Assembly: GCF_964204645.1 (NCBI RefSeq)
Contig: NC_134031.1
Coordinates: 6,634,001 to 6,698,000 of the forward strand
Length of the DNA stretch: 64,000 nt
Reading direction: 5' to 3'
DNA from: Tubulanus polymorphus
Taxonomy: Eukaryota > Animalia > Nemertea
Within the stretch, counting starts at the first letter, position 1, and each line of letters opens with the position of its first letter. The notes beneath the pieces were generated by a model. That model saw only the letters and a list, made by a program, of their open reading frames with translations. It did no database searches and was not told where the DNA came from. The translations under genes were made by a program, and so were the position numbers. This document shows positions 3,479 to 63,896 of the stretch, piece by piece.

Positions 3479-3496
3479 AAAAAATACGTAAAATAA

Positions 3497-3913: not shown

Positions 3914-3930
3914 TTTTTTGATATATAGAT

Positions 3931-14603: not shown

Positions 14604-15525
14604 TGAGTCCCCCCTCGCATAGAGAGCATTGGATCATTGACTTAGAGTCCGGGTCGGGGCACGATAAGCAGCTTGACTTGGGAGACTTCGCGGGTCCATG
14701 CAACGGTAGGGGTGGCCCCGGCTTCTTCTTAAGTAGCTTTTCTAACATCTTAGGCAGATCTTCACTAAGCCAAAGGAGGTACGATGAGCCCTGCACATGT
14801 AATTTTGCAGATTTCTTAGCCGATCCCTTGTAAAGGGTTATGTGGATTGTGCCGAGGGCGTTATCATTAGAGTCGACATATGTCCCACTGAAATGGAGGC
14901 CGTGGTCACCACGGTCTATAGGGTTGCCATAATCGCTCCTTAGTTCGGATAGGAATGATTTGACACTGCTACTTGGGTCTTTGCTTGACAGGTCAATAAC
15001 TACTGACTGAGACTTTTCTGAGATATTAATCTGTTGGTTTAAAAGACCCAGTTCATTTTCTGTTGATGATTTTCGCCGTCTATCCGAGGTTGTGGTATGG
15101 CTTAAGTGTTCTCTGAGATGCACGTAAGCGCTGTTAAGTTTTTGAAATTGTGCAGTAGCATTTGGAATAACGCTGCGATCCGGGTGAGTTTCTCGTGCCA
15201 GGGAGAGGTACTTAACGCGGAGCTCGTCCAGTGTAGGCGGTTTAACGAATTGCAAAGTGTTCATGCTTACTTTTACCTCATTTCCGGGTCTTTGTATGGA
15301 CGGCGCCATTTTGAATTCCGACGATCGGTGTAGTTTCGTCACTATTTCGAGTCTACTCACGACTTAATAAGCTCTGGCGTTTCTATACTTGCATCTGTGT
15401 AAAATCGGAGTATTTAATTTAACCTCTAAGGGTTAATTTCAGTTACTTGACGGTAGTAATCGGTTAGTCTTGCACAAGATTTATAGAGCGACAAATTTCG
15501 CGGCCATGTCCTACTACAGCGCCAT
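14604..15525 (-). mobile_element. LINE-B 5' end (5'UTR plus J-domain ORF1), truncated within the PHD finger by the Polinton-type terminus
   Basis: Near-identical to 44830-45748. ORF 14599-15360 contains LARETHPDR and the start of the PHD (CLSC..MIQCSLC). Confidence 0.9.
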
Positions 15526-18500
15526 TGATTCCCATGACGGCCACTAATCAAATAGACAAAAACGAGGAGGTGTATAAAGACTTAGAAGAGTCAATCAATG
15601 ATTTAGTGCCTTCAATTCAGGAGATAGTGGGTAATACCACTACCCTTATGACCGAGTCCTCTGAACTGAGGAAATCTGTACAATCATTATTAAATGATGC
15701 GCAGTTAATTATCGCGTCATTGGAACTTTCACATACTAAAAACAGTCTGAAGCATCTTGATAATAAAATTGGTAGCCTCGGCATTGCCGCTTCAAGTTTC
15801 TCGGAGAACTGCAATACAATTTTGCAGTGCCTGAACAGTATTCAACAAGATGTCTCGAGCAACGACAAAGTTTATCGGGACTTTCTCAGTGAGACGCAGG
15901 AACTAGTACTAAAAACTCAAGATGAGGTCGTCTCACCTGGTTACTCTGTCTCCACGCGTATTGATGGCGTGGTGGATCAAATATCCAGTAAATTGGATCT
16001 TGTCTCAAGTCATGTGATTCACACCGAACGTAAATCGCATATGACGAAGCCTGATGAACCGAATCATGAAATCAACACTAATAGCGTTGATGATCGATCG
16101 GATAAATGCATTAAAGTACTGGTATGCTCTGATTCGATACTTAACAACTATGAAAGAACTATGAACTGTGAACTATGAAAGACTTACCCGTAATATCAAC
16201 GCTAGCGCGGAATCCGTGAAAACTATAGTTCGCTGGACGATCTACACCGTTTTGGTGTGAACTACAACGGAGGCCATGATATCGTAATCATTCATGTCGC
16301 CACAAATGACATTCGCCATTGTAAGAACTATGAAGAGGTGCGATATGAAGCCTGGAGGCTAGTAGCTCTAGCGTATGATTTGGCCCGAAACTCCGGCGCT
16401 CGGATTATGATCTCTGGTTTGGTACCTAGTCTTGATCGTATCATGGATGATAAGATTATTGATTTTAACATAAGTGTTCGAAGACATTTGGCTGATATCT
16501 GTGAAGCCAACATTCTGTTCTTTGTTAATGACAACCTTATAAGAAAGGGTTATCTACAGCGTCATTTATTTAGGGATGATGTTCACCTCTCATATGAAGG
16601 AACTGCAGCTGTGCTTTCTAGCAATATCATACGTGCACGTATTCATTCTAACACTGGCATTAATATCATAAGTAAACGCTAGTTCTTGTATATCTGTTTC
16701 ACTTGGGGGCTCCTGGTAGCTATTCATCTCGTGCCTCAGGTGTAGATATAAGTTCTTATTTAGACTTAATCCGAATAATGTTAAAAATCTGTAGTTGGAA
16801 TTTAAACGGGATCCTCACAGATAAATTTAGCGGTGTTCTACAGAGTAAGCTAGAATTAGTGAATATTAAATCAGAGGAAAATGATTTTATCTGTATTCAA
16901 GAAACCCACGCCCATGGATACTGTGATATTTCACTAGAAGGTTATTTTATTTTGAGGAGTGATCGAAAAAGTACAACCAAATCTAAATCTAACTCCGGGG
17001 GCATTTCTGTTTTAATAAAAAATAAGTTTAAACCTCAAATCAGATGTGTTAAAAAAACTGCTGACCATATAATTTGGGTTGAAATTGATAAAGTAGTAAC
17101 ATGTACTGATAAGAACATTTTCCTTGCTTGTATTTATATACCACCTGTAAACTCTCATGTTTACGAATCGAAAACTTTGGATATTTTCGAATTATTGTAC
17201 CAGGATATAGCCTCTTTCTCTTCTCAGAGTAGAATTCTTCTTTGCGGGGATTTCAATTCGAGAACTGGAAATTATATAGATTTTATTGATGATCAAGGTA
17301 GAGACAGTCATCTAAGTGATAATACTGGCTTTTCCATGTCGTCAGATTGCTGTAAATATAGGAGATCTCAAGATTTGATAGTAAATTCCTTTGGTCGTAA
17401 GCTTATTGACCTATGTAAGTCATGTAACCTACGAATCCTGAATGGCTGAATGCTAGGTAATCTTATAGGTAAACCAACTTGTTACAAATATAATGGATGT
17501 AGTGTGGTTGACTATTTTATTTGTGATGATGACTTAGTCAAACATGTTTTATGCACTAAAGTAGATAAACTCACTATGTTTTCTGACCACTGTAAACTTT
17601 CATTATCTATCAATACTAAGAGAAGTAATGATAAAAGTGACTTAAATAATTCTTCCACGCAAGCTTCCTCCTGTCCCCTTTTTGACAAACCCCCTAGATT
17701 CAAATGGGCAGAGGATAGCCTAAATAGTTATAAAGCTACTTTTGATGGAGAAGATGTCATCAATAAGATACAACATCTTAGTAATCTATCTGCCCAGGAC
17801 AATATCTCAAATTATCTATCCTCCTGTATAGATATTTATAACCTAGTTTCTGAATATTCTCTAAAATCAAGCCGCATTCCGATTAACAAGAACAAGAAAC
17901 ATATCATTAAACAAAAATGGTTTGATTCAGAGTGTCTGCAAGAAAGGAGAAAGATAAGATGAAAAGCACGTAAAGTTTCGTTGTCCTCTAATTCTAATAA
18001 TAACTTAATTTCGGACTTCTATTCCGCAAAGAAAAAATACAAAAAATTATTAGCGGGAAAAAAAGAGCTTTCACGGACAATTTAATAAATGACCTAAATT
18101 ATTCCAATTTGAACTCTAAGAAATTTTGGAAAAATATAAATGCTTTGCGTAATCCGCGCCAGTCGACACAATCAAATATCACCCTTAGGCAATGGGCTCA
18201 GCATTTTAAATCTTTGAGCACTCCAAATCCTATGTACCAAGACAAAATTAAATCTTTTAGTGAAACATTGATTGAACTTGAAAAAGGACAACCTATCTTT
18301 ACTCAGCTTGACTTCCAAATAACAGAAAAGGAAATTCTTGATGCTTGTAAAAACCTTAAATGTAATAAGGCATCGGGGCATGATGCAATTTTTAAAGAAA
18401 TTTTAAAGCATAGTATGCCCTCAATGTTGATACCACTCAAGAAATTGTTTAATGCTATTTTAAGCTCTGGGGAATATCCCGCTGAATGGTCAAAGGGAAT

Positions 18501-32387: not shown

Positions 32388-32738
32388 TGAAAGATCTACT
32401 CGGTATATGGATGAAGGTGGCTGTCACCAGTGCGCGGTACGAACCAATCACTATTCTAAACTTAAACATCAATCACTCCGACTAGAGTAAATTGACATCA
32501 TCGCTCATAGTTCATTCAGATCATCGAATAAATCTGCATCTTTAATGATCCAAACCATTAAGCAAACTGCGAGAAGTAGGAACTTCCAATCGTAAACCAT
32601 TTGACTGTTGCAAATTTCGGTTTATTTTATTTCGGTTTCTCGATTACCATGGCAACCGTTCGTAGATATTTCAAAGAGAATTCAAAACATTTCTGGTTTT
32701 TCTCGCGCGGGAAAACCAAAATGTTTTGAATTCTCACT

Positions 32739-35700
32739 AAGGTAAGAATGAAAAAGGATGTCATGATATAGATTTTGATTAATACAAATTTATCAAAATC
32801 AATTTAAATAAAAAATTTGATATTAAAATGGAAGCAAATAAGAAGTACTACTGTCCAACATGTAAAATCAATATAGATAAATCTCAAAAAGCAAGACATA
32901 ATAATACTAAATCTCACTTAGAGAATAAATTGAAATTAGAATATAAAAAATGATATATTAGAAACTAAATTAGAAGAATCAAAGAATGAAAAAGAAATAT
33001 ATAAATGTGATACATGTAATCAATCATTCAGTAAAAAAAGATATTATAAAGAACATTTAAAATCTAAAACTCATATTAGAAATATAAACAATGATATTTT
33101 AGGGGAAGACTATTTTGATAAAGATATTAGTAAGAAACAAAGCACGATTAAAAGAATAAAAAATAAATTAATCAATAAAAGACCAAACATGGAAGATGTT
33201 AGAAATTATATTAATTCATTAGATAATGTAAAGGCAATAGAAATATCTGAAGCATTTAAAAGTGATATTGGACCAGCTGCTATTAGATTTAAATTTTATA
33301 AAGGCAAAACGTTAGAAAATATGAAAAATATTACAAAAATAATAACTGACGTAGGATATTCCTAAAATTAGTATATCTGCTAAAGTTTAATTTATAAAAT
33401 CTGAAGATAAATCAATATATGATATAAATTCTCATTCACATAATATTATTTTAAAAGAACATATAGATGATAGATTAGATAAATGTTATAATGAAATAAA
33501 AAGTAAAATAGAGAGATATTTTGAAGGATCGGGTTTAATATTTGATGAAATAATATTTATGACTTTACATGTGAGTAATTGTATATATGTCGTTCTAGAT
33601 CAAAGGTCGAACGGTCGAGCTCATAAAAAAAACAAATATTAAAAGTAATTTAAAACTATAATATATTTTCATAGCCGTGTGTATTTTGTATTATAAATAA
33701 ATATTTATTCTAAGATATTAATTATTTAAATTTTAAAAGCATATTGTGTTAAATCAATTGGTCACGTCACTTCGCTCCGCTCCCAATTGATTTAATTACA
33801 ATACACAATAAAGAATATATTCATATAATCAAATATATTCTAATAATTATTATTATTCTATTATTTAATCTATAATACACACGACCATGAAAAAATGTAT
33901 TATAGTTTTAAATTACTTTTGATATTTGTTTTTTTAATGAGCCCAATCCCAATCTTTCAACCTTTGATCTAGAACGACATATATACAATTACTATAATAT
34001 TTTATATATGGATATTTTAAATATAAATAACATATTAATGAAAACAATTTTGATAAAAAAATTGATATCAAAATGGAGAGTAAACAAATACGCAATGAAT
34101 TCCTAGCTAGAATCAAAGATACTACAAACGTTAATTCTGTTGATTATAAATTTAAAAACTTAACAGAATTAACAATTTATATGAAATATTTAATTACAAA
34201 TATTGAAACAATTACTAATAGGTATGGAGATAAATTAGTTATCCACTTAGAATATGAAGGATAAAAAGGTTACAAATATACATTCAGAACATATTTACCA
34301 GATAGATTTCATAGAATATCTAGTGAGGATATTGAAGATTTATGTTCTGGTGTTTTTTATTTCATATATAAAGGTAAGAATGAAAAAGGGCACAATGATA
34401 TAGATTTCGAATAAAAAATACGTAAAATAAATGGTAGAATTAAAAGAATATAGAATATTTGTTGATTATAGAAAACTGACAAATTATAAATCACATAATT
34501 TACTAGTACAATTAGATAGAGAATTTAAAAATTGTGTAGATTTAAAATTAGTTGATATTAGTTTATGTAATTGTTTTTATAATATATCAGATGAAAGTCT
34601 TGAACATAGACTGTTTATGATTTATGATAGAAATAAAAATCAATGATATCATATGTTTTTAAAACTAGGATTATATAATTAAGAAACATAAGCGCAAGAA
34701 ATTAATAGAAGAGCTACTTTATTATCTGCTGGATTTAAAATCAGATTTTTAAAAAGTGATACTAATAATAAAGTAAGAATAAAGTTAGCTAATATCGAAC
34801 AACACAAATTTATGGTAAGAAAACCATTAGCTAAACTGCCAGGACTTACACCAAATAAAACTTGTACAAATGTTGATTCTACACCAAATATTATGCCTTT
34901 CACACACTTTTATAGTTATTGAAATTTAATTGATCCTAGAAAAATATTAGCAACTAAAGATACAATTTGTAATTCTTGTTTATTGAATATTTTACCATTG
35001 AAGAATTTTAAAGAATTTGGAATGCAAATAAATTATAATTTAACTGAATGTGATTTTAAACCTTGTATTCCACAATTTGATAATTTTAGATTAGAAGTAA
35101 GAAATCATAATAGTTACTTAATTGATTTAGATAATTTTCCCGTAATTTATGAATTAGTTATAAGATGTAAAGAGTAATTTTTTGATATATAGATATGAAC
35201 ATAACGGTAGGCCCGAGTATATGTTTTGGATTTGATTTTAAACGTGAGAAAAAAATGAAATTTAACATTAATGATGTAATAATTCATATCAAAAATATTG
35301 CATTTTTTGATGAAACAACATTTTAATATGAAATAAATAAAAGAAACTTATATTGCAGAAAAAATTCCTGATTTGATTAGAAATTCTTTAAGATCTTATG
35401 AATTAGATGAAGATTTTATTATCGATGATATTAAAAGAATAATAACTGAAATATATAAAAATGAAACAAATAATATTATAAATGTTGAAATGATTATAAA
35501 TAAGATAACTAAATATTTTGAAGAAGGTGATTTTTTGATAAATAAATGAGTGATAATAAGTGGATAATAACTGGTTTATATAATGGAGCATTACTATCAG
35601 TTGGAACAGTTGTTTATACAATGTTATTGAAGAAAGTATTCAAAATGGGAAATATTAATGTTGATAGATTTGATATAAATGATATTTTAAAATTAACATT

Positions 35701-35985
35701 AGCAGTAACCTTATCTAATTTAACTATTGATTATTTGGGATAACAAAAATATATTCCTCCTATAAACGCATAATTTTTGTTAAATAAATGGCATCTGCAT
35801 TTATAACTATTATAGGATCGGCAATTGTTAACGCTTTAGCATTTACTGGCGGGGGATATTTATTTAAGCATATTGATAAAAATGGTTCATTATCAGAACA
35901 AAAAAGACATAACTTAGCATTAGAGAAATATAATAAAACTGCAGATGAATATAGAGAAAAGAGAAATATAGCTGCAAAGCAGCGA
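32739..35985 (+). mobile_element. Degenerate Polinton-related remnant, duplicate of 1810-4635 with a more complete minor capsid gene
   Basis: Colinear with 1810-4635; palindrome 33574-33993; mCP pseudogene 34431-35177; small ORFs 35546-35743 and 35788-35988. Confidence 0.85.
33574..33993. repeat. 420-bp palindrome, copy of 2638-3057
   Basis: AGTAATTGTATATATGTCG...CGACATATATACAATTACT. Confidence 0.9.
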
Positions 35986-38729: not shown

Positions 38730-39731
38730 TCAGAACAGCACATGACGCAGTTCTCTCGACACTGATTTGTGCCTCAGCTGTTTTAAACATTGGTTAATTG
38801 GTACTTCCGGTGTTGTTGATTTGTGGGCGGACCATATATCTTCTGACTGCGAGAGTGATTCGAGTTTGCTCAGTACTAGCACAGCGAATGTGCAGTCTCT
38901 CAACCATCTTCTACTATCAACATCATTCGTACAACAGAGCCGAAGCTGAAGGCTGATAATAGTGTCAGTGGCAGTGTTCGTGGTACACCTTCCGATATTG
39001 TTTGTGATGTTACGGCTACCAATACGATACCTGTGGCTGTGGTGCCGGTGGACCCCGATCAAACCGATAAAACAGAAAAACTGGCTGGGTTTCTCGATGC
39101 TAAATCTTATGAAACACCTATAAACGGAAAGTGTGATGATTTGGTCAACTTGAAGTTGCTGTACGAGTCTGCAATTCCAGCTAAGCCTGAGAAGTCTAAT
39201 GTTAAATCGGAGAATGCTGATTTTGAATCAATTAACCATGGATTATACGATCCTAATGCCAAGATGTTAGCGTTCAAGACATCGCCCGATAGAATGCTTT
39301 ATTGGGTTCAAGCAATAGCTTACAGGTACTACTCTGGCTTCGAAACGAATGATGTATTTATGGTTAACTGGACTGATAATAAGGAGAAGAAGGGAGATAA
39401 ACTAAGTGACATTTTGGTGCAGATATCGAGCACTAACTGTGATAATCCTGAAAATATATACACTATACGTATTTTTCCGACCACAGCTACTATCACCGTT
39501 CAGGGGAACTATCTGGACATGTGGAGCACGCGTGAATTTGTTGCGTTACTAGAAAATGTACAACAATTGTACGATGCGTTTCCGGATAAATGTGCCGTTA
39601 AGAAGAAACGTTCTACCAGTAAAGTAGTAGCTACGAAACTCAAGAAGGGTAGTCGTTTAATTAGTAAACCAAAAGTTATTGCCTCGGCGGGTGTCGCCTC
39701 AAAACCTAGCGCGTGTCCGAATTGTGGTTAT
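38730..39731 (+). mobile_element. LINE-A 5' portion (5'UTR and N-terminal part of ORF1)
   Basis: ORF 39033+ contains YTIRIFPTTATITVQGNYLDMW..EF..L, similar to a LINE-B ORF1 segment, and is cut at CPNCGY by the LINE-B tail. The 5' boundary is approximate. Confidence 0.65.
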
Positions 39732-39871
39732 AATTCAATTCAATTCAATAAACTCTTTATTGTACTGCTTACACCCTTTCGGGTCGAGATGCACAGAGTG
39801 ATATTTACAAATAGTATTTACAAAACATAAACATTTTACATTAATATAACAAGAATAAAAGCAGTTTCGTG

Positions 39872-42800
39872 TTAATTATTATCAGAGTCTAGGATTTCAA
39901 AGCCTTTAGAGATGTATTCCCCAATAGGACCATGTAGTTTCTTATCTGTGAGAAGTTTTTTGAATTTGGTCTGGTCCTCCCAATTTGGGGCATCTGGGTA
40001 TATACAGCTCACTGCTCTGTTTAGGTTATATCTTATTTCATTTAGTCGAGAGCATTCTATTATAAAATGAAACTCATCTTCAATGGCATTACAGTGTTGG
40101 CACATTCTATTCTCTCTTGGTAAATTGGTATATCTTCCTCGCTCTATCAGAAGACGATGATTACTTATCCTAAATTTACAAATGTTGGTTCTAATCAGTT
40201 TTGGTAGTATAGGATCCATTAAGAATGGCGTCATGGTAAATTCAGGATTTAGATTTTTGTAGCAGTCTAGTTTTGGGGAATTTTATATCCATTTGTGCCA
40301 AAAAATTTTATATCTCTCTTGTAGTGTATGTTTAGCTCGGGTAAAAGATTTAGAATTAGATGGATTCTCTATCAGTTCTGAATGGTTAAGGATGCCAGCA
40401 AGTTTTGCGAGGAAGTTATACCAAGTAGAGTTCAACAAGATTGACTCTTGCATGGCGTGGTACACCAATCTGTCCTGATTCTGGTGCACAGCATGCCAGA
40501 ATTTCAGGAGTCTCATACAAGCAGCTATATAGAGTTGGTATTTACCGAGTTCACCAATTACAGCCATGTTTGTTGCTCGACGTGTTACATTAAGTACATA
40601 TTTACAAAACGAGATAAATAGTTTATGTAGGTGGTCATCTTTTTCAAATGCTAATTCAATGTTAAAGACATCAGTTTTTGAGATTTTCCTTAGGAGTTGT
40701 TTTGAGGGGACCCAAATTTCACAGCTGTACAATAAAATTGGTGCCACCAAATTATCGAAAAGTTTTATACATACTTCTGGGGTGCAGTTACCCGCACCAA
40801 TAAGTTTTTGGATTGAGAACATGGCTCTTCTAGCATTATTTACCAGGTGGACCTTTGCTTTGTTAAAAACACCGTCTGATGAAAAAATTATACCGAGGTA
40901 CTTGTATTCTTTCACTATGTCTAATGCTAGATTGCCGTACTTAAAGTCTAGGGACACTGGAATGTTACCCTTACGACTAAATACTATGACCTTACTTTTT
41001 TAATGTTAACTTCAAGTTTCCACCTCTGAAAATAGGTATATAACTTATCCAGACAACGTTGGAGCCCTCTTTGGGACTCTGATATCAAAACGATATCGTC
41101 AGCGTATAATAAGCAATTTATGAGATAGTTATGTAATTGAACAGGATCACACAATTCATCAAATATATCGATCACATCATTTATGAAAATATTAAACAGG
41201 ATAGAGCTAAGTATGTCACCTTGCTTTACTCCCACGTTTGAGGGATACATTTCAGACGTTATATTGGTACCGATTTTCAGGCACCAGGTTGTTTTAGAGT
41301 ACATGCTAGATATTATGTTTTGAAAGTGTTGCCCAAGATTAAGATCGTTTAGCTTATGCATAAGTCCCTCGTGCCAGACGGAATCAAATGCTCGTTTTAA
41401 ATCAATAAAACATGTGTATAGCTTTTGTGATTTCAGCAATTTTTTGTCAATGATGGTCTTTAGCGTAAATATATGATCAGAGGTGTTGCCTTTTGGCATG
41501 AATCCTATCTGGTTTTTATTGATAATTTTATTATAACATAGATATTTAATAAGTCTGTTATTGATTATGGAGGAGAATAGCTTTCCTAGACAACTGTTCA
41601 GCGTTATACCTCTATAGTTATCCGGGTTATTGGGCGCGCCACCTTTATGGATGGGTGTTATTATTCCTTGGGCCCAAGAACTCGGGAAGATACCATTACT
41701 GTAGACGTGGTTAAAGATTTGTAGTAAGCTTTTTGAGATTGCCTCTTGTCCGAATTTTAGTAATTCGTTGGTGACGCTATCTAACCCCGGGGATTTGTTG
41801 TTCTTAAGCTTATTGATTGCTTCAAGTATTTCGCGTTCAGTTATTCTGTAATCAAGTTCATGGAATATTTGAGTATTAGGGTTGATTGGGTTATTGCCTG
41901 TATTGGTATCTATTTGATTTTCAGTATGATTTTCCCCTTTACTGATATTAATAAAATGCTGTAGTAGATCTTCCGCATTTGGGCCTTCATAAGTTTTATT
42001 CTTATCACCACCAGGTGCAAGATTAGTGACCGCGTTCCAGAATGTCCTGGGTGGTAGATTTGGCTGGTTAAGTTTATCAAGTTGAGCCTGTTTGAATTTT
42101 AGTTTTTTTGATTTGATAAGCTTTTTGTAAGCCTTTTTGGCTTTAAAGTATTCAGCTCTGGTATCATCTGATGGGAATTCACTAATAAGTCTGCCTAATT
42201 TACGGATTCGGTGCTTTTTTGGTGGCATTGATCATCAAACCATTTCTTATAGGATTTGCGTGCTTTGGTTACCCTTGGCTTTCGGCAATCATTCTTCAAA
42301 ATATTAACAAAATCCTCTACTATCCGGTCAACTGACTCTTGAGTTGGGCTGTCTGATGTCCATCTGTTACCTGTTGTTAAGATCCTGCAATTTTTGTATA
42401 GTTTCTGGGTTTGACAGCAGGTTTTGAATATCGGACGGTGACTTGTAATTTTTGAAATGCTTGTTTTCAAGACATTTCTTTTTAAAGCTAGAATGATTTT
42501 TAGTTGGTTCCTGGTTTTCAAAGTTTAAGCCTACACCAATTGGACAATGATCAGACAGCTCACTTAGGTCATGGACATGGAAATATCTGACATTATGAAA
42601 CAGGTCTTGGTTTACTATACAAAGGTCGGGAGTGCTACTACCATTATACTGATGACAAGTGTACTTGCCCAAAAAGTCACCGGGGCTTCTGCCGTTTAAA
42701 ATACATAAATTGGCAGTATCACACATTTCAAGCATATTTCTCCCCATTTTGTTAATGGTTTTATCCTTGCTTCTCCTGTTGGGCATATAACCGTTTTTGG

Positions 42801-43362
42801 AGACAAGCTCCTGGATATTTGGTAGAAAAGCGAAGTCATCCTCATCTGTTTTATGTATAACATTAGCTGTTGCGGTCCGGGCATTAAGGTCACCTATAAT
42901 CATTACATCACCGCGTTTACGGTATTCAGAGCAGCTGCTCTCTAGGAGTTGAAAAGTTTCATCGGAGTGTTTTGCTCCGTAAGTGGAATTTAAGGGGCTA
43001 ATATAGGCAATGGCTAGATATAATGAACTAGAATTTTTGGTGCCGGAATTTGGAGTTATTTTGAGCCAAACTATTTCCGATGAATTGTTTTCAACCACTT
43101 TGACAAAGTTTCTAAGATAGTCTTTAACATATATTATAATGCCCCCATAATTTCTACGGGCATTTGGCAGATTAGCTCTACACGATTGCAGCTTCTTGAA
43201 CCCAGAAATTTCGTTTGAGATTTCATCGTTTTGGCAAGTAAATGTCTCTGTTAGGCATATAACATCATAACAGTTGGTAAGTTTCTTAAAGTACTCGTCC
43301 TCAGTCTTACATATAAATCCATTTTTCACACCCTGGATATTCCAATGACATATATTGAGCAT
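39872..43362 (-). pseudogene. LINE-B ORF2: AP endonuclease, reverse transcriptase, CCHC
   Basis: HWNIQG, LTET, GDLNART, SDH; NYRGITL, FIDLKRAFDSV, GVKQG, YADD, YKYLG; IERGRY..CQHC..EDEFHF..C. Split by about two frameshifts and a stop. Confidence 0.92.
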
Positions 43363-43478
43363 GATACGGGTAGTGACAGTTATAGTATTTTAAGACAAAT
43401 ACACAGCAGTTGTTTAATACAAGCAAGCGACAGGATAATACCTGTAACAATAGAATTTATATATATAGATAAGAGTAT

Positions 43479-45530
43479 CTAGTGATATCTGGAGTGCCTG
43501 GTGAACAGTTGTAAAGCTCTGCGGACACCAGTCGCTAAGTTGTTGGCGAATCTCCTGATTCCGTCTCTCTTGTTGAGATGGATCGAGTCCTTGTAGAAAC
43601 GTTGTTGATCATCAAGGTTGTCATTGTTCACTACGGTGGTGTTTCTGTCGTGCGCGGCTAATGATACGATATAAGAGTTAAATGATCTCGACTGGATGTC
43701 GAAGGTTCGCGTATCGAATCTTGGCGGAATTAATGAGACAACGAGTTTCACACCTGGAAAGTAGTCCTTGATTTTATTAACTAGGTTGATGTATTAGTCT
43801 ACACAAGCACTACCGCTATTGAGGTTTCTTATATCGTTGGTGCCAACATGCAGTATGATGCAGGACACACGCTCATGCTGGATTTTGTCTACGACATCCG
43901 ATGCTTGCCTGATGGTGAAAGCGCGCTTAGAGAATACTTTGCAAGCATCTTTGACGAAACGTTTCGGATCTATATATCTGGTATTCGAATCGCCGATAAT
44001 GTAAACGCTCCGATAATTCCGACTTTGACTTAGTGAGGCCTCACGAGGTGTCGGGCTGCAGGTGTTGATATGTCGGTCGTTGCTGATTGTGTCATTATCG
44101 GAGTCGACAATCAGATTCCTGTGGCCATCAGTATCACTAGAAGCGAGGAGACTATTTTCGTGTAAAGACTCCTCCCTTGCTACCGGTGAATTGTTCGCAG
44201 CCGTAGATTTCAAATCATTGAGCAGCTCTAGGGCTGACATGACTTGAGCGTTCGTATTGCACGTTTTCTCCAGGATATCTTTGACGCGATTATCATTTCT
44301 GTCTACTAATTTCTTTAGTTGTTCGGACGATTTCTGCATGATCGGTACAGCGGTAGATAAATCCGAGACATGATCTACACGCTTAACTAGGTCATCTAGA
44401 CGGTCATGTATTGAGTTCATGTGTGACAATTTGGCACACTGGCCAGCTTGTTGCGAGACGTTAACCAGCTGTGATTCAATCGATCTAAATAGGTCAAGAA
44501 TATCCGAACTGTCCAACACTGACTGGATGGTTTGGCACCCGATGGAGACGCGATTGGACTCCGCGATGTCTACTTGACACCCAATGGTGGTGAACTTCTT
44601 ACTGATCGAATGCATTATGTCATGCGTTAAGTGATCGGGCTCCACATTGGATGAAGCGTTCACTTGACACCCTGCGGTGGTGTTTCCATTGAGGGCGGTA
44701 ACTGGAGCGCAACTTATCAGCGGTTGGTTTGGCTCCCCAGCATTACTGCATGGGGGGCAGATGTAAATTTCATCCATATTTGACGTAGCTTTAGAGAGGT
44801 CGTCCTCTGATAGCCTGGAGCATTTGTTGTGAGTCCACCCCTCGCATAGAGAGCATTGGATCATTGACTTAGAGTCCGGGTCGGGGCACGATAAGCAGCT
44901 TGACTTGGGAGACTTCGCGGGTCCATGCAACGGTAGGGGTGGCCCTGGCTTCTTCTTAAGTAGCTTTTCTAACATCTTAGGCAGATCTTCACTAAGCCAA
45001 AGGAGGTACGATGAGCCCTGCACATGTAATTTTGCAGATTTCTTAGCCGATCACTTGTAAAGGGTTATGTGGATTGTGCCGAGGGCGTTATCATCAACAT
45101 ATGTCCCACTGAAATGGAGGCCGTGATCACCACGGTCTATAGGGTTGCCATAATCGTTCCTTAGTTCGGATAGGAATGATTTGACACTGCTATTTGGGTC
45201 TTTGCTTGACAGGTCAATAACTACTGACTGAGACTTTTCTGAGATATTAATCTGTTGGTTTAAAAGACCCAGTTTATTTTCTGTTGATGATTTTCGCCGT
45301 CTATCCGAGGTTGTGGTATGGCTTAAGTGTTCTCTGAGATGCACGTAAGCGCTGTTAAGTTTTTGAAATTGTGCAGTAGCATTTGGAATAACGCTGCGAT
45401 CCGGGTGAGTTTCTCGTGCCAGGGAGAGGTACTTAACGCGGAGCTCGTCCAGTGTAGGCAGTTTAACGAATTGCAAAGTGTTCATGCTTACTTTCACCTC
45501 ATTTCCGGGTCTTTGTATGGACGGCGCCAT
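43479..45530 (-). pseudogene. LINE-B ORF1: J domain, unknown alpha/beta domain, PHD finger, coiled coil, SGNH esterase (two in-frame stops)
   Basis: YLSLARETHPDR..AQFQKLNSAY; CLSC..CSLCEGWTHNKC..CPPC; IGDS, HVGTND, DSIHL. The three ORF pieces share one frame, and the stop at 45051 is Gly in the 14.8-kb copy. Confidence 0.88.
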
Positions 45531-45748
45531 TTTGAATTCCGACGATCGGTGTAGTTTCGTCACTATTTCGAGTCTACTCACGACTTAATAAGCTCTGGCG
45601 TTTCTATACTTGCATCTGTGCAACATCGGAGTATTTAATTTAACCTCTAAGGGTTAATTTCAGTTACTTGACGGTAGTAATCGGTTAGTTTTGCACAAGA
45701 TTTATAGAGCGACAAATTTCGCGGCCATGTCCTACTACAGCGCCACTG

Positions 45749-48700
45749 ATTCCCATGACGGCCACTAATCAAATAGACAAAAACGAGGAGGTGTATAAAG
45801 ACTTAGAAGAGTCAATCAATGATTTAGTGCCTTCAATTCAGGAGATAGTGGATAATACCACTACCCTTATGACCGAGTCCTCTGAACTGAGGAAATCTGT
45901 ACAATCATTATTAAATGATGCGCAGTTAATTATCGCTTCATTGGAACTTTCACATACTAAAAACAGTCTGAAGCATCTTGATAATAAAATTGGTAGCCTC
46001 GGCATTGCCGCTTCAAGTTTCTCGGAGAACTGCAATACAATTTTGCAGTGCCTGAACAGTATTCAACAAGATGTCTCGAGCAACGACAAAGTTTATCGGG
46101 ACTTGCTCAGTGAGACGCAGGAACTAGTACTCAAAACTCAAGATGAGGTCGTCTCACCTGGTTACTCTGTCTCCACGCGTATTGATGGCGTGGTGGATCA
46201 AATATCCAGTAAATTGGATCTTGTCTCAAGTCATGTGATTCACACCGAACGTAAATCGCATATGACGAAGCCTGATGAACCGAATCATGAAATCAACACT
46301 AATAGCGTTGATGATCGATCGGATAAATGCATTAAAGTACTGGTATGCTCTGATTCGATACTTAACAACTATGAAAGAACTATGAACTGTGAACTATGAA
46401 AGACTTACCCGTAATATCAACGCTAGCGCGGAATCCGTGAAAACTATAGTTCGCTGGACGATCTACACCGTTTTGGTGTGAACTACAACGGAGGCCATGA
46501 TATCGTAATCATTCACGTCGCCACAAATGACATTCGCCATTGTAAGAACTATGAAGAGGTGCGATATGAAGCCTGGAGGCTAGTAGCTCTAGCGTATGAT
46601 TTGGCCCGAAACTCCGGCGCTCGGATTATGATCTCTGGTTTGGTACTTAGTCTTGATCGTATCGTGGATGATAAGATTATTGATTTTAACATAAGTGTTC
46701 GAAGACATTTGGCTGATATCTGTGAAGCCAACATTCTGTTCTTTGTTAATGACAACCTTATAAGAAAGGGTTATCTATAGCGTCATTTATTTAGGGATGA
46801 ATTCACCTCTCATATGAAGGAACTGCAGCTGTGCTTTCTAGCAATATCATATCGAAAAAGTACAACCAAATCTAAATCTAATTCCGGGGCATTTCTGTTT
46901 TAATAAAAAATAAGTTTAAACCTCATATCAGATGTGTTTAAAAAAACTGCTGACCATATAATTTGGGTTGAAATTGATAAAGTAGTAACATGTACTGATA
47001 AGAACATTTTCCTTGCTTGTATTTATATACCACCTGTAAACTCTCATGTTTACAAATCGAAAACTTTGGATATTTTCGAATTATTGTACCAGGATATAGC
47101 CTCTTTCTCTTCTCAGGGTAGAATTCTTCTTTGCGGGGATTTCAATTCGAGAACTGGAAATTATATATATTTTATTGATGATCAAGGTAGAGACAGTCAT
47201 CTAAGTGATGATACTGGCTTTTCCATGTCGTCAGATTGCTGTAAATATAGGAGATCTCAAGATTTGATAGTAAATTCCTTTGGTCGTAAGCTTATTGACC
47301 TAAGTCATGTAACCTACGAATCCTGAATGGCAGAATGCTAGGTATTCTTATAGGTAAACCAACTTGCTACAAATATAATGGATGTAGTGTGGTTGACTAT
47401 TTTATTTGTGATGATGACTTAGTCAAACATATTTTATGCACTAAAGTAGATAAACTCACTATGTTTTCTGACCACTGTAAACTTTCATTATTCATCAATA
47501 CTAAGAGAAGTGATGATAAAAGTGACGTAAATAATTCTTCCACGCAAGCTTCCTCCTGTCCCCTTTTTGACAAACCCCATAGATTCAAATGGGCAGAGGA
47601 TAGCCTAAATAGTTTTAAAGCTACTTTTGATGGAGAAGATGTCATCAATAAGATACAACATCTTAGTAATCTATCTGCCCAGGACAATATCTCAAATTAT
47701 CTATCCTCCTGTATAGATATTTATAACCTAGTTTCTGAAGATTCTCTAAAATCAAGCCGCATTCTGATTAACAAGAACAAGAAAGATATCGTTGAACGAA
47801 AATGGTTTGATTCAGAGTGTCTGCAAGAAAGGAGAAAGATAAGAAGAAAAGTACGTAAAGTTTCGTTGTCCTCTAATTCTAATAATAGCTTAATTTCGGA
47901 CTACTATTCCGCAAAGAAAAAATACAAAAAATTATTAGCGGGAAAAAAAGAGCTTTCACGGACAATTGAATAAATGACCTAAATTATTCCAATTCAAACT
48001 CTAAGAAATTTTGAAAAAATATAAATGCTTTGCGTAATCCGCGCCAGTCGACACAATCAAATATCACCCTTAGCCAGTGGGCTCAGCATTTTAAATGTTT
48101 GAGCACTCCAAATCCTATGTACCAAGACAAAATTAAATCTTTTAGTGAAACATTGATTGAACTTGAAAAAGGACAACCTATCTTTACTCAGCTTGACTTC
48201 CAAATAACAGAAAAGGAAATTCTTGATGCTTGTAAAAACCTTAAATGTAATAAGGCATCGGGGCATGATGCAATTTTAAATGAAATTTTAAAGCATAGTA
48301 TGCCCTCAATGTTGATACCACTCAAGAAATTGTTTAATGCTATTTTAAGCTCTGGGGAATATCCCGCTGAATGGTCAAAGGGAATTATCACCCCAATTTT
48401 CAAGAAAGGCAATAAAGATGATGCTAACTGTTATAGAGGTATAACCATCACTAGTTCTTCTGTCTAATTCTAAATAATCGTCTGGAATCATATATTGATA
48501 CTAATAATGTAGTTTCGAAAAACCAAATTGGATTTAAGAAAAATGCGCGTTGTTCTAATCATCTTCTAACCATGAAGCATCTCGTGAATAAATATACCTC
48601 TAAACGGAAGCAAAAATTTTATTGCGCGTTTATCGATTTCCAACGTGCTTTCGACAGTGTAATACATGATGCATTATTTATCAAATTGATCAAAAGCGGT

Positions 48701-50420
48701 ATTAATAGCTAGTTCTACAGAATTATTAAGAATATGTATAAAAATGCTCACTCGCAGGTTCAAAGTAACTCGTATCTGTCAGAGTCGTTCCCTGTAAAAA
48801 TAGGGGTACACCAAGGAAACATCCTGAGCCCCATACTCTTTAATATTTTCATCAATGATATAAACTCCATTTTTACAGGTAATGACCTACCCACATTATG
48901 GGACATTACTGTATCCTGTCTTATGTATGCCGATGACCTAATCCTTTTCTCCCGATCTGAAAATGGCTTACAAAATTCATTAAAAAAACTTGAAAAATAC
49001 TGTTCTCAGTGGGGTATTAGTGTTAATGTAAATAAATCTTGTATTATAGAGTTTAATAAATCAGGGAAGGTTAATGATGTAAATAGATATGTCTTTAAAA
49101 ATGAAGCTATACCAATTCGTAAACAGTGCAACTACCTTGGTTTTACTATCTATTGTAATGGTAACTTCAAATTATCACAAGAAGTCCTTGCAAATAAGGG
49201 CTTTAGAGCTCTATTTAACCTAATCAAAATGCCTGGCTTCTACAGTCTTAGCATATCTCAACAGTTACATCTTTTTAATTCTCTTATTAAACCTATTATT
49301 ACGTGTGGCTCTGAAGTCTGGGGCTTCTCACCTATTATGACATACTTAAAAAACAGCTCAGAATTTAACGACATAGGTATGCAATACAATAAATATATTT
49401 CCCAAAAAGTACTCTCCAGATTTTGTAGAATCATTCTAGGCCTACACGCGAAGGCACCCATTTTACCTGCTCTTGGAGATCTTGGTGTTTTTCCATTAAT
49501 TATCGACATCCTCACATCATCAGTGAAATTTTGGATGGCAAATATAACTGGTGATCGCACATCTGTTATATATAAATGTTTTCTTTAAATGTATAATGAT
49601 AATCTTTTGAGGAAAAGTGAGTTTAATTATATCTCATGTATTAAAAAATTACTGATAAATTTCAATTTAAAAGACCTGTTCGATAACGTAGGAGGGTCCA
49701 ACAGTCCTGCTTCAGTCTTGCGACGTTTCAAAAATATCCTTAGGGAAAATTTTCTTCTTGGTTGGAGTGCAGAGATTTTTAACCCCTCTCATAGAAGATA
49801 TCTTTTTTATAGTAAAGTTAAAATCTCATATCAACTGGAACCATATTTGCTATTTATAAAAGACTTCAGTACAAGAAGCGCATTAGCGAAGTTACGCACC
49901 TCTTCACATAACCTACTTATAGAGAAAGGTAGACATCTAGGTATTGATAGAAAATCCCGTTTGTGCAATATATGTCGATGTCTAGATGACGAAACACATT
50001 TTATTACAAACTGTAGCATTCACAACTTAAACAGGATCAAATTCAACTTACAGCATATGGATATAAATGGTATTTCAAATATTTTTAATTGTATAGATGA
50101 AAACTCCAGCATAAGGTTTCTGTTAAACCTAGCTACTTTTACGAAATTTGGATTTAAACACATTGCATGTAAATAGTATTGTAAATAGTATTTTAAAGTA
50201 TGTATAGATGTCGCCTTAAGCTCTCAGTTGCATCATCCGTCTCAACTTTGTGCTCTATTGTCATAGTTATGTTCCTATTGTATCATTTTTTGCATTTTTA
50301 CTTTTCGTTTCTTTTTTTATAAATTCCGTCTGCTTTCTTTTTTCCTTGTTTATGTTCATTGACAATCTTTGTATGTACAGATTATATGATGAATAAACTG
50401 AATTGAAATTGAATTGAATT
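45749..50420 (+). mobile_element. LINE-A 3' portion (ORF1 remainder, disrupted ORF2, TGAAT tail)
   Basis: Near-identical to 15526-20572, with a ~330-bp deletion near 46850 that removes the ORF1/ORF2 junction. Confidence 0.92.
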
Positions 50421-52709
50421 CATCACACGTTATCTTTGGATCAAAATTAATATGATTGGACTTAGCGATATGTTCTGACCGTGTTGCCGGCCCATATACG
50501 CAGCGTCTCAGAATGGTTCTTGAAGGGGGACCGGCCCATTGCGCAGTTTTTCAGAATGGTTCCATACCACAGATAGGGAGGCCCAAACGCCGCCTCTCGG
50601 AATGGCTCTGGGGGCTGCCGATGCGTGCGTTCGCGGTAAATTTTATAAGAGAGCTTACAAATAGTACCATACGAATTTTGGGGAAGAGTCAAATGTAAAA
50701 CTTCGTACGGGGAGTGAGTCAAAGCAAAATGTACGTACTATTAGCTCTCTATAAGTATGTCTGTATGAGAGATATCTAAAAAATAATGTCAAACGGCAAT
50801 TGTCAATTAATAGTCCCTCAATTTAAGCTTAATCATGCAATTCGTTGGTTGAATGGAGGGGCTTTTCAAATGAACGTACTGGTGGTGTGGTCAATATAGA
50901 AAGGACAAAGATCGAACGAGGAGGGGCCTAATGAAACGGCTGGGGCAGAATTTACGGTTAGTTATTTGAATGATAGGGTTTGTACCACTGACAGGTCAGA
51001 CGGGGTATGGGGGGTGTGGAGTTGGTTCCAAGAACTCTAAACATGTGAAGCATTTAGATTTATTTCCCGGCCAATTAATGAATCATTTTCGGTAGCAAAA
51101 TAAATAACAGGATTCTGCATTAATGCACCGTCCATTGGACGGGTATTCAGCTAGTCTAGATATAAATATGCACTACGTAAATCTTTTATAGTTTGCTATA
51201 GTTGCTGGACGTATCGGCCCCACTCCGCGCGGTTGCACCACCGCGCGGGATTTACGCGAAGCAGCAAACACAAACATGCCCACTCTCTCAACTTTCAATG
51301 ATAGAAATCGTGTGTGCATTTCAATTATTTCGGCTGTTAGGGTTTTAAGGCACAATATAAGTTGATGATGTGATATGGCGATGTTAATTAATGATAATTC
51401 CGCAGTGAAGCTAGTCACGAACGGTGCCGATTGAGTGTACAGCTGCCAAAAACACTGAAATGTGCGTAGTTGCGTAACTATTTGCAGTGAATTGCAGACG
51501 AAACATGAAGCCTTAACGGCCGTTTAAAAAAAATTATACCAATCGCAATTGTAAAATAAAATTTAGAAAGTTAAAATTCTGGCCATTTCTAAAATGTTAT
51601 TACTAATTTTTAGTCAGTGCCGAACGTTTAGTTTTTCAACAAAAATGAGGGGTGGTAGGTAGTCATGCAATTCAAGTCATCATTTATTGCACGTTACTTC
51701 CGTGTTGTTGAAAATCTCGCGAGTCCTGGACCAAACCCCATTGAACAATGTGATCTGTGTGCTGGCCACAAATGCACACAGATCACACTACACTACCCAT
51801 TACACACTCCAGTACCAATATTTAGAGTGTCTTTCTTCCTGGATGGTATTTCGCGAAAGAATGATTTATTAGTCTAGGTGCCACGAATCGTACAACTTTA
51901 TCAGATATCGGTTTGTTCAAAACGCAGAAATGCAGAAACGCAGAAATTGGTGTCTTGATTTCAGGGACAATAAAGCTAAATTTAATTTTACTTTATCCAG
52001 CTCAATTTCAGTAATTTCCGTAATACCGTCTGTTGAAATTATGCAGACGACATAGCCAAATTCACAATCGTTATGAGCCACGATGAATGAATCAAAAACG
52101 ATAATCAAAAACGATAAATGCCGACACGGTTTTGAAAAATGTGTAGATATTACATACCGCGTACTCATGAAAAATCCAATCATATCATGAGAAAGTTGGA
52201 AGGGGGTCCCAGAGTCTTATGCATAACCTGCAAATGTAATACTCAGCGTCTCAGGAAATCATTTACAGATGAAAAAGGAAACTCATCATATCGAAGATGT
52301 AACACTTGCTGTAGTATTTGAAAGATTCTTTGAATAATCGAAAGATTCTTTCTCTCTGCAATTAGACACTCAAATCAATTTGCGAGCGTTCCAGCTACAG
52401 ATTAACAGATAAACCACGAAACTCGTGGTAATATAGCCCGCTGATGAGACAAAAAAATTTTATTTTCTCAGCAACCGTAACTAGACTGAAAATCGTAAAC
52501 GAGCAAGCAGAGTGAATGATTTCGAAGGTCAAATTCGTTTGTATGCAGCTGTAGTAATTAACTATGTTTGAATGCAGCTTAGGTTACTGACTACATGCAG
52601 CTCTAATGAATCCTTAACATTGTCCCGTAAAATGAACACACCAATTTCTGCGTTTCTACATTTCTGCGTTTTGAAGAAACCGCTAACTCGATACGATGAT
52701 TTTCGGGTG

Positions 52710-62464: not shown

Positions 62465-62532
62465 TTATTAAGGAAAAATTTTATTAAAATTAATTTTTAG
62501 TGATGAGCGGTAATTTTTTTATGTTATAAATA

Positions 62533-63291: not shown

Positions 63292-63307
63292 TTTTTTCAC
63301 TATATAA

Positions 63308-63871: not shown

Positions 63872-63896
63872 ATGCATAATTTTTTTTGCTAAATAA

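What the first reader, a model, noticed from the sequence alone, without database searches (positions are those of the whole stretch)
43479..45530. LINE ORF1 with an N-terminal J domain (HPD) in front of PHD, coiled coil and esterase
Seen: PTLDELRVKYLSLARETHPDRSVIPNATAQFQKLNSAYVHL is a clear DnaJ helix II-HPD-helix III signature, intact in both copies (about 15.2 and 45.4 kb). It lies in the same frame as the PHD and SGNH domains. Established: LINE ORF1s typically carry RRM, CCHC, PHD or esterase domains, and J domains recruit Hsp70 (polyomavirus T antigens use one). Inference: this retrotransposon may recruit Hsp70 for RNP assembly or remodelling. I do not know of this architecture being described.
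Basis: partly seen in the sequence, partly recalled or inferred. Interest (0 to 1): 0.8.

Follow-up and report, generated by a model that had tools for sequence, protein, structure and literature searches.

The report
LINE retrotransposon ORF1 with J domain
A jumping gene (LINE) in this animal genome starts its first protein with a genuine, conserved J domain, the module that switches on Hsp70 chaperones. The same layout turns up in many related elements from other marine eukaryotes, and I found no published description of it.

Summary
Window 43479-45530 (- strand) is the ORF1 of a 6,023-bp APE/RT LINE (39732-45754). Its first ~80 residues score above Pfam's DnaJ cut-off, with HPD at 45399-45407. 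An unassigned ~105-aa alpha+beta domain, a PHD finger, a helical region and an SGNH esterase follow in the same frame.

Corrections: this copy has two in-frame stops. The "second copy" at 15 kb is the same insertion carried by a ~30-kb segmental duplication.

The J domain is not a one-off capture:
- An independent copy lies on another contig.
- At least five diverged subfamilies in this genome keep HPD and are followed by APE-RT.
- A search of 1.84 billion proteins found dozens of J + mid domain + PHD + esterase ORF1s in other assemblies and marine metagenomes. 52 of 54 aligned sequences have HPD, all 54 match Pfam DnaJ, and several sit upstream of APE-RT ORF2s.

AlphaFold gives a J-domain fold. 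Non-synonymous divergence in the J domain is as low as in the PHD and esterase domains.

Hsp70 recruitment is inferred; a predicted complex with the host Hsp70 gave only weak support. No held paper describes the architecture. Verdict: a real new variant of esterase-type LINE ORF1.

The parts
39732..45754 (-). Whole LINE insertion (6,023 bp), nested in the 5' region of another, + strand LINE
   Evidence: Homology to the independent copy L021 runs from 45744 to 39762, plus the tail. An uninterrupted paralogue of the host LINE (L036) joins window 39731 directly to 45757. Contigs of runs X2 and X3 join 39731|45755.
45531..45754 (-). 5' untranslated region of the element
   Evidence: Shared with L021 from 45744. 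The ATG is at 45530.
43479..45530 (-). ORF1: 683 codons in one frame, interrupted by two in-frame stops (45051-45053 and 43794-43796)
   Evidence: Translation. Intact relatives of 712 and 689 aa exist in the same genome.
45300..45509 (-). J domain (helices I-III); HPD at 45399-45407
   Evidence: Pfam DnaJ 29.8 bits against a cut-off of 27.8. AlphaFold model has pLDDT above 90 here, with helices 8-18, 27-41 and 51-77. Foldseek matches solved J domains at probability 1.0.
44952..45257 (-). Conserved 'mid' domain (beta-beta-alpha-beta-beta-beta-alpha) that always accompanies the J domain; no family assigned
   Evidence: Most conserved stretch of the family. Model pLDDT 89.9. Fold matches are all below Z 8. 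There are only weak Pfam hints to DUF3378 and RnlA.
44748..44897 (-). PHD finger (C4HC3)
   Evidence: Pfam PHD 23.3 bits here, just under the cut-off of 24, and 26-27 bits in intact relatives. The Cys/His pattern is visible.
44199..44516 (-). Helical, probably coiled-coil region
   Evidence: It is in the same position as the coiled coil of esterase-type ORF1 proteins (PMC3905857). Many weak coiled-coil-type Pfam hits fall in relatives. No coiled-coil predictor was run.
43482..44009 (-). SGNH/GDSL esterase domain with the GDS, GTND and DxxH motifs
   Evidence: Lipase_GDSL_2 scores 28-35 bits in intact relatives. PDB 4c1b (ZfL2-1 ORF1p esterase) matches at E 6.3e-5. The motifs are visible.
39872..43362 (-). 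ORF2, broken into several pieces: APE endonuclease (42367-43362), reverse transcriptase (40984-42228) and a C-terminal Cys/His motif
   Evidence: Exo_endo_phos_2 at E 2.5e-9 and RVT_1 at E 5.3e-37.
39732..39871 (-). 3' untranslated region ending in a short (TTGAA)n tail
   Evidence: Sequence. The same end is present in L021 beyond an unrelated ~960-bp insertion.
14604..15533 (-). Duplicated 5' fragment of the same insertion (5' UTR, J domain at 15079-15288, mid domain, first half of the PHD)
   Evidence: Collinear duplication 14604-21922 with 44830-52454. ORF at 14599-15360. Pfam DnaJ 29.0 bits. The upper limit 15533 is approximate.

Best explanation
This is a full-length but now inactive copy of an APE/RT LINE of the esterase-ORF1 (CR1/L2-like) kind. 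Its ORF1 protein has acquired a two-domain N-terminal module: a bona fide J domain followed by a conserved alpha+beta domain. The usual PHD finger, coiled coil and SGNH esterase come after it. The module is ancestral to a whole group of such LINEs in this genome and in other, mostly marine, eukaryotes, and it is kept by selection.

Shown here: the domain identities, the fold, the conservation, the LINE context and the distribution.

Inferred: the HPD loop docks on the host's cytosolic Hsp70 and triggers its ATPase. ORF1p multimers sitting on the element's RNA would then load Hsp70 onto nearby clients (ORF1p itself, nascent ORF2p, or the RNP). That could drive folding, assembly or later remodelling and disassembly of the retrotransposition particle, much as viral and class-III cellular J proteins bring Hsp70 to one dedicated job. 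The mid domain probably supplies the client, nucleic-acid or membrane contact.

My odds: a real, selected J domain in a LINE ORF1 family, about 0.95; that it acts through Hsp70, about 0.65.
For: - Pfam DnaJ is above its curated cut-off in the window copies and in four diverged subfamilies with E 7.7e-7 to 5.9e-11. It also matches all 54 aligned N-termini, best E 5.8e-24.
- HPD is exact in 52 of 54 sequences. The helix II basic residues and the helix III F and AY positions are conserved.
- The AlphaFold model of residues 1-208 has mean pLDDT 87.3, with a helix II-HPD-helix III hairpin. Foldseek's top domain-sized matches are solved J domains at probability 1.0, with TM-scores by target of 0.5-0.69.
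- Context: every subfamily checked has APE + RT downstream. The same holds on metagenome or assembly contigs L023 and L024 and at the ERZ26052378 contigs; L025/L026 carry a large downstream ORF that was not scanned.
- Selection: between subfamilies dS is saturated. dN of the J domain (0.37-0.57) matches PHD (0.37-0.71), mid (0.24-0.51) and SGNH (0.35-0.79), and is below the J-mid linker (0.62-2.2). In one close pair (L019/L007), omega is 0.29 for J, 0.27 for mid and 1.64 for the linker.
- An independent insertion exists on contig C4 with different flanks.
- The host has an intronless cytosolic Hsp70 ending in EEVD.
- The predicted complex of the window's J domain with that Hsp70 plus ATP gave weak support. 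Score 0.58, best of 3 controls 0.00. The mark was reached by 51 of 78 solved complexes and 2 of 108 mismatched pairs. At 0.60 or under, it was reached by only 5 of those 78 solved complexes and by all 4 mismatches that passed (of 180). The runs agree in at least 85% of contacts and the partner's pLDDT is at least 73. J-Hsp70 complexes have been solved, so this may show likeness only.
Against: - No biochemical or expression evidence: no listed run holding the element is on record as RNA.
- In this genome's subfamilies helix I has drifted from the usual Y-x-x-L-G motif, and the Pfam scores of the window copies are only 1-2 bits over the cut-off.
- Some relatives keep the domain but have lost HPD: Branchiostoma lanceolatum CAH1250389.1 has EET and P0023 has HLD. 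So Hsp70 stimulation is not indispensable everywhere.
- The complex prediction is only weak support.
- The window copy itself is dead, with two stops in ORF1 and a fragmented ORF2.
Confidence: 0.75

Rival explanations
1. The domain keeps the J fold but works without Hsp70. It could act as a structural cap, an oligomerisation surface or a docking surface for ORF1p (a pseudo-J domain), and HPD is conserved for another reason.
For: - HPD-less members retain the domain and the rest of the architecture.
- Helix I is degenerate and Pfam scores are marginal in this genome's family.
- The complex prediction gave only weak support.
Against: - HPD is exact in 52 of 54 sequences that are otherwise only about 26% identical per column. 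That pattern is what selection on the Hsp70 contact would produce.
- The helix II basic face and the conserved helix III F are kept as well.
- From established knowledge, pseudo-J domains typically lose HPD.
Confidence: 0.17
2. The J domain is a one-off capture of a host exon by this copy, or an assembly or annotation chimera. It would not be a feature of a retrotransposon family.
Against: - An independent copy lies on C4.
- Five or more subfamilies at 40-57% identity all carry J + mid + PHD + esterase in one ORF upstream of APE-RT.
- Dozens of equivalents occur in other assemblies and metagenomes.
- Public runs hold the same junctions.
Confidence: 0.02
3. The J + PHD + esterase proteins are domesticated host genes that merely descend from LINE ORF1s. 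The window copy would be a pseudogene of such a gene.
For: Some database members are annotated as ordinary genes. One example is the Branchiostoma protein named as an esterase. Some lie on megabase contigs.
Against: - In this genome and on several foreign contigs the ORF is followed at LINE spacing by APE-RT.
- It is multi-copy with near-identical insertions.
- It has defined LINE ends with a microsatellite tail.
Confidence: 0.04

Closest known systems
Esterase-type and PHD-type ORF1 proteins of CR1/L2 LINEs (Kapitonov & Jurka 2003; types III/IV of Khazina & Weichenrieder; ZfL2-1 ORF1p, PDB 4c1a/4c1b)
   Same: PHD finger, coiled-coil region, basic linker and C-terminal SGNH esterase with the catalytic motifs. 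The ORF lies upstream of an APE-RT ORF2, and the element ends in a short tandem-repeat tail. There is a direct sequence match to 4c1b.
   Different: There are about 195 extra N-terminal residues made of a J domain plus a conserved alpha+beta domain. These are not mentioned in the surveys I could read (PMC3905857 and its supplement, PMC4120745, PMC13343379). PMC3905857 states that esterase ORF1 proteins in Repbase lack any structural RNA-binding domain.
J domains of polyomavirus large and small T antigens
   Same: A selfish genetic element encodes its own N-terminal J domain with HPD and so commandeers host Hsc70 (established knowledge).
   Different: There is no sequence relationship beyond the J family. 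T antigens use the domain for Rb/E2F remodelling and replication in a DNA virus. Here it sits on the RNP-forming protein of a retrotransposon, and its function is untested.
Class III (DNAJC-type) cellular J-domain proteins such as auxilin
   Same: A J domain is fused to unrelated specialised domains, without the G/F region or the DnaJ zinc-finger and C-terminal domains. This is the layout that targets Hsp70 to one client.
   Different: It is encoded by a mobile element. The partner domains (mid, PHD, esterase) are not those of any cellular J protein I know of.
TBP-like/KA1-type alpha+beta domains: RNase HIII N-terminal domain (DUF3378), RnlA N-domains, KA1 domains, METTL16 VCR
   Same: The mid domain's predicted topology and the best structural matches fall in this fold class. 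Aquifex RNase H3 residues 2-70 match at Z 6.9, rmsd 2.4 A, 69 residues aligned. KA1 domains match at Z 6.9 and METTL16 VCR at Z 6.5. A few members give weak Pfam hits to DUF3378 and RnlA_toxin.
   Different: No match reaches a level that separates homology from a common fold: all Z are below 8 and Foldseek E is about 0.02. No Pfam or PDB sequence hit is significant. Membership is not established.

Membership tests
J domain (Pfam PF00226, DnaJ) | Profile score above the curated gathering cut-off (27.8 bits) | tested here: met
   29.8 and 29.0 bits in the window copies. 29.6, 34.7 and 42.8 bits in other subfamilies. 54 of 54 aligned N-termini match, best E 5.8e-24.
J domain (Pfam PF00226, DnaJ) | His-Pro-Asp tripeptide in the loop between helices II and III | tested here: met
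   HPD at 45399-45407 and 15178-15186. Exact in 52 of 54 relatives.
J domain (Pfam PF00226, DnaJ) | Compact helical fold with an antiparallel helix II/III hairpin | tested here: met
   AlphaFold gives helices 8-18, 27-41 and 51-77 with pLDDT above 90. Foldseek matches solved J domains at probability 1.0.
J domain (Pfam PF00226, DnaJ) | HPD-dependent stimulation of Hsp70 ATPase, or binding to Hsp70 | tested here: inconclusive
   Only an in-silico complex with the host Hsp70 was possible, and it gave weak support. Score 0.58 against a best control of 0.00, and possibly recalled from solved J-Hsp70 complexes. The biochemistry cannot be tested with these tools.
APE-type non-LTR retrotransposon (LINE) | ORF2 with apurinic-type endonuclease followed by reverse transcriptase, downstream of ORF1 on the same strand | tested here: met
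   Exo_endo_phos_2 and RVT_1 in the window and in L019-L022. Also in the L023 ORF2.
APE-type non-LTR retrotransposon (LINE) | Dispersed copies with common 5' and 3' ends | tested here: met
   The C4 copy shares 45744-39762 and the tail, with different flanks. 18 matches to the ORF1 N-terminus were found genome-wide.
APE-type non-LTR retrotransposon (LINE) | Target-site duplication | tested here: inconclusive
   The junctions at 39731/39732 and 45754/45755 show at most 1 nt of shared sequence.
CR1-group (CR1/L2) LINEs with esterase-type ORF1 | SGNH esterase with Ser, Gly, Asn and Asp-x-x-His blocks at the ORF1 C-terminus | tested here: met
   GDS, GTND and D-x-x-H motifs. Lipase_GDSL_2 hits. 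Match to the ZfL2-1 ORF1p esterase 4c1b at E 6.3e-5.
CR1-group (CR1/L2) LINEs with esterase-type ORF1 | 3' end of short tandem repeats rather than poly(A) | tested here: met
   (TTGAA)n at 39732-39750. That such tails typify this group is from PMC13343379 (poly-A only in Zenon) and from my own knowledge.
CR1-group (CR1/L2) LINEs with esterase-type ORF1 | RT groups with reference CR1/L2 reverse transcriptases in a phylogeny | not tested
   No reference LINE library (Repbase/Dfam) is available here. My tree of 9 ORF2s only shows that this genome's J subfamilies form one clade with 98/99 support.
PHD finger (PF00628) | C4HC3 zinc-ligand pattern and a profile score over the cut-off (24 bits) | tested here: met
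   The pattern is present. The window copy scores 23.3 bits, just under the cut-off; intact relatives score 26.2-27.2 bits.
RNase HIII N-terminal domain (DUF3378, PF11858) / TBP-like fold, for the mid domain | Significant profile match or a clearly separated structural match | tested here: not met
   4 of 54 members hit at best E 0.012, and the six-frame search of the genome found none. 3vn5_A at Z 6.9 is tied with unrelated folds. I therefore treat the likeness as a lead only.

The most novel reading that the evidence does not exclude
The J + mid pair is a cis-encoded chaperone-recruiting and nucleic-acid (possibly RNA:DNA hybrid) binding module. It would give esterase-type ORF1 proteins the RNA-handling function they otherwise seem to lack. 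The slot in front of the PHD finger is an exchangeable cassette: sister ORF1s carry an RNase H1 hybrid-binding domain or a whole RNase H there instead. That would imply these ORF1 proteins act at the reverse-transcription intermediate, with Hsp70 used to assemble or strip the complex.
Probability: 0.2. Interest if true: 0.8.

Novelty: new variant of a known kind. Interest (0 to 1): 0.62.

Why it matters
How LINE particles are assembled, moved and taken apart is poorly understood. For esterase-type ORF1 proteins, even the way they hold RNA is an open question (PMC3905857).

A retrotransposon lineage that has hard-wired an Hsp70-activating domain into its particle protein would be direct evolutionary evidence that Hsp70 cycling is rate-limiting for LINE propagation. 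It would parallel what DNA tumour viruses do with T-antigen J domains.

It also gives a clean experimental handle: HPD mutants, plus a small well-folded N-terminal module.

It adds a new domain type, and a new unassigned domain, to the ORF1 classification. The N-terminal position appears to be modular, holding J + mid, an RNase H1 hybrid-binding domain or RNase H.

Practically, such ORF1s are present in public databases under misleading names such as esterase or CbpA.

Tried and rejected
- The word-indexed protein search with the intact 712-aa ORF1, whole and restricted to residues 20-215, found nothing. The exhaustive profile search then found many relatives, so those blanks reflect the index and not rarity.
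- The ESM Atlas feature search gave no usable hit. The Atlas fold search of the mid domain gave only an unnamed, mostly cnidarian cluster and bacterial lookalikes.
- The profile of the mid domain against PDB sequences gave nothing below E 0.29.
- Pfam DUF3378 found nothing in a six-frame search of the genome. I could not obtain RNase HIII sequences for a profile-profile test.
- dN/dS between subfamilies could not be computed because dS is saturated. I used relative dN and one close pair instead.
- The ORF2 tree does not resolve whether J-type elements are monophyletic relative to RNase H-type and J-less elements. The deep forks are unsupported and L024 sits on a very long branch.
- I first read the 39731|45755 joint in public contigs as an empty allele. 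A 79-84% identical uninterrupted paralogue of the host LINE exists and the joint contigs have only ~30-nt sides. I therefore cannot say whether the insertion is polymorphic.
- The organism's name is coded, and most foreign hits carry no taxon.
The broken window ORF1 was searched in its natural pieces, and only natural intact relatives were used as queries.
Full report
**The sequence.** On the minus strand the window holds a LINE. An ORF1 frame runs from the ATG at 45530 to the stop at 43479. It is followed by pieces encoding an APE endonuclease (43362-42367; Exo_endo_phos_2, E 2.5e-9), a reverse transcriptase (42228-40984; RVT_1, E 5.3e-37) and a Cys/His tail. Read straight through, ORF1 is 683 codons in one frame. 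It has two in-frame stops, at 45051-45053 and 43794-43796. Pfam's DnaJ model scores 29.8 bits (E 6.4e-7; cut-off 27.8) over residues 40-83 of the first ORF piece. HPD is at 45399-45407.

**The two copies are one event.** Window 14604-21922 is collinear with 44830-52454 at 96-98.5% identity, and 1-4637 with 31741-35902. The J-bearing fragment at about 15 kb is therefore the same insertion, copied with its neighbours by a ~30-kb segmental duplication. It stops inside the PHD finger. The element is nested. Window 39240-39731 and 45757 onwards are contiguous in a 79-84% identical paralogue (L036) of the + strand LINE that faces it. Contigs in two public runs join 39731 to 45755. That fixes the insertion at 39732-45754, 6,023 bp. 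It has a 224-nt 5' UTR and a 3' end of (TTGAA)n. No clear target-site duplication is visible.

**Independent copies and subfamilies.** A six-frame search of the 268-Mb assembly with the N-terminal 253 aa gave 18 places.
- One, on contig C4, is 98-99% identical over the whole element and has different flanks. It is a genuine second insertion.
- The others are 41-58% identical and define at least five further subfamilies.
- Two have uninterrupted ORF1s of 712 and 689 aa.
- All keep HPD. The four I extended have APE and RT downstream, and their ORF1s hit DnaJ (29.6-42.8 bits) and PHD (26.2-27.2 bits) above their cut-offs, plus GDSL (25.8-35.5 bits, over its 32.9 cut-off in one of them).
- Their ORF2s form one clade with 98/99 support.

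**Selection.** Synonymous sites are saturated between subfamilies. Non-synonymous divergence in the J region (0.37-0.57) equals that of the PHD (0.37-0.71), mid (0.24-0.51) and esterase (0.35-0.79) domains. It is below that of the J-mid linker (0.62-2.2). In a close pair of one subfamily (L019/L007), omega is 0.29 for J, 0.27 for mid and 1.64 for the linker, on few changes.

**Beyond this genome.** The two word-indexed searches were blank. A profile of the family run against 1.84 billion representative proteins gave 6,249 hits at E 0.001 or better, 22 of them at 1e-30 or better. Dozens aligned from the very N-terminus.
- The best hits read J domain with a textbook Y-x-x-L-G...HPDK motif, then the same mid domain, PHD, a long coiled coil and an SGNH domain.
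- I aligned 54 N-termini, 6 from this genome and 48 foreign. All 54 match Pfam DnaJ, best E 5.8e-24. 52 have exact HPD.
- The exceptions are P0023 (HLD) and P0005 (EET), the Branchiostoma lanceolatum protein CAH1250389.1, which UniRef names as an esterase.
- Where contigs could be read, the J-ORF1 sits upstream of an APE-RT ORF2. Examples are a Tara Oceans scaffold (L023: ORF1 1,137 aa with DnaJ, PHD and NADAR; ORF2 1,197 aa with APE + RT), another marine metagenome contig (L024) and two megabase contigs of ERZ26052378. On L025/L026 a large downstream ORF follows but was not scanned.

**Structure.** AlphaFold2 on the 54-sequence alignment, with the window's own N-terminus as target, gave mean pLDDT 87.3. 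It shows helices 8-18, 27-41 and 51-77 around HPD 42-44, then a second domain of beta-beta-alpha-beta-beta-beta-alpha. Foldseek against the PDB returned solved J domains at probability 1.0, with TM by target of 0.5-0.69. Sequence search of the PDB also gave DnaJ J domains (E 0.004) and, for the C-terminus, the ZfL2-1 ORF1p esterase 4c1b at E 6.3e-5.

**The mid domain.** It always accompanies the J domain and is the most conserved part of the protein.
- Modelled alone it reaches pLDDT 89.9.
- Its best structural matches are Med18/20 (Z 7.4), the N-terminal substrate-binding domain of Aquifex RNase H3 (Z 6.9, rmsd 2.4 A, 69 residues), KA1 domains (Z 6.9) and the RNA-binding VCR of METTL16 (Z 6.5). 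Foldseek lists BamC N-domains at E about 0.02.
- All are below the level at which a common arrangement can be told from kinship.
- A few members give weak Pfam hits to RnlA_toxin (5 of 54, best E 0.0032) and DUF3378, the RNase HIII N-domain (4 of 54, best E 0.012).
- I leave it unassigned. Nucleic-acid binding (TBP-like) and acidic-lipid binding (KA1-like) are the two leads.

**A modular N-terminus.** Among 48 long relatives whose best match began further along the profile, beyond the N-terminal module, 17 carry the RNase H1 N-terminal hybrid-binding domain (Cauli_VI), 5 carry a full RNase H, 4 more carry DnaJ and 2 carry NADAR. In the individually scanned cases these domains sit in front of the PHD finger. 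One RNase H-type ORF1 is followed by a 912-aa ORF2. So the slot before the PHD finger is exchangeable. This fits the modular ORF1 evolution described by Metcalfe and Casane (PMC4120745). It also lends circumstantial weight to a nucleic-acid role for the J + mid module.

**Mechanism.**
- Shown: a selected, canonical-looking J domain at the N-terminus of the particle-forming protein of a LINE family.
- Inferred from what J domains do: the HPD loop docks at the nucleotide-binding domain and linker of ATP-bound Hsp70 and triggers hydrolysis. This locks Hsp70 onto a client close to ORF1p.
- The host has an intronless cytosolic Hsp70 ending in EEVD.
- A predicted complex of the window's residues 1-85 with that Hsp70 (1-610) and ATP gave "weak support". 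Score 0.58, best of 3 controls 0.00. The mark was reached by 51 of 78 solved complexes and 2 of 108 mismatched pairs. At 0.60 or under, it was reached by only 5 of those 78 and by all 4 passing mismatches of 180. The runs agree in at least 85% of contacts and the partner's pLDDT is at least 73. Since J-Hsp70 complexes are solved, this may only restate the likeness.
- Which client is served (ORF1p multimers, ORF2p or the RNP) is unknown.

**Novelty.** I found no paper that describes a J domain in a LINE ORF1.
- Full-text searches combining ORF1, non-LTR or LINE with DnaJ, J domain or HPD returned nothing relevant.
- The ORF1 surveys I could read do not mention it: PMC4120745, PMC3905857 with its supplement, and the 2026 vertebrate CR1-group survey PMC13343379, which scanned Pfam.
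- Kapitonov and Jurka 2003 is not held, and Repbase/Dfam cannot be searched here. Prior notice in a database entry is therefore possible.
- I rate it a new variant of a known kind: an esterase/PHD-type LINE ORF1 with a new N-terminal module.

**Limits.**
- The organism is coded, and most foreign hits have no taxon.
- No RNA evidence was found.
- The LINE clade was not named by RT phylogeny.
- The window copy is inactive.

Noticed in passing
window 1-4637 with 31741-35902, and 14604-21922 with 44830-52454: A roughly 30-kb segmental (tandem-like) duplication spans the window at 96-98.5% identity, rearranged between the collinear blocks. Any feature seen 'twice' about 30 kb apart here is not independent.
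   Followed up: partly
window 39240-39731 plus 45755-50176 (+ strand); copy at 15525-20328; paralogue L036: The host of the insertion is another LINE, whose ORF1 has a coiled coil and an SGNH esterase but no J, mid or PHD domain. The J-LINE sits between its 5' region and its ORF1 start, head to head.
   Followed up: partly
P0020, P0075, P0083 (RNase_H); P0028, P0033, P0050 and 14 others (Cauli_VI); L033: Sister ORF1 proteins with PHD + coiled coil + esterase carry a full RNase H or the RNase H1 hybrid-binding domain at the N-terminus instead of J + mid. I know of no description of RNase H-type modules in LINE ORF1.
   Followed up: partly
L023:191-3604 (P0009) and one more hit: A J-type ORF1 on a Tara Oceans scaffold has a NADAR domain (E 2e-20) after the esterase position. 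This is a further accessory module in this ORF1 family.
   Followed up: no
window 39731|45755, runs X2 and X3: Public contigs join the two flanks of the insertion, skipping 6,023 bp. This could be an empty allele (a polymorphic, recent insertion) or a closer paralogue of the host LINE. The sides are only about 30 nt, so it is undecided.
   Followed up: partly
P0005 (CAH1250389.1, Branchiostoma lanceolatum); P0035 (JGI/IMG): Database names are misleading. The amphioxus member is named 1-alkyl-2-acetylglycerophosphocholine esterase. A metagenome member is called curved DNA-binding protein CbpA, so eukaryotic LINE ORF1s sit in metagenome gene sets under bacterial names.
   Followed up: no
L021:6092-7049: The independent C4 copy has an unrelated ~960-bp insertion just before its 3' tail.
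   Followed up: no
window 59644-64000: Other first-stage notes place a Polinton-like element (pPolB with an intein, a VLTF3-like factor) at the window's end. I did not examine it.
   Followed up: no
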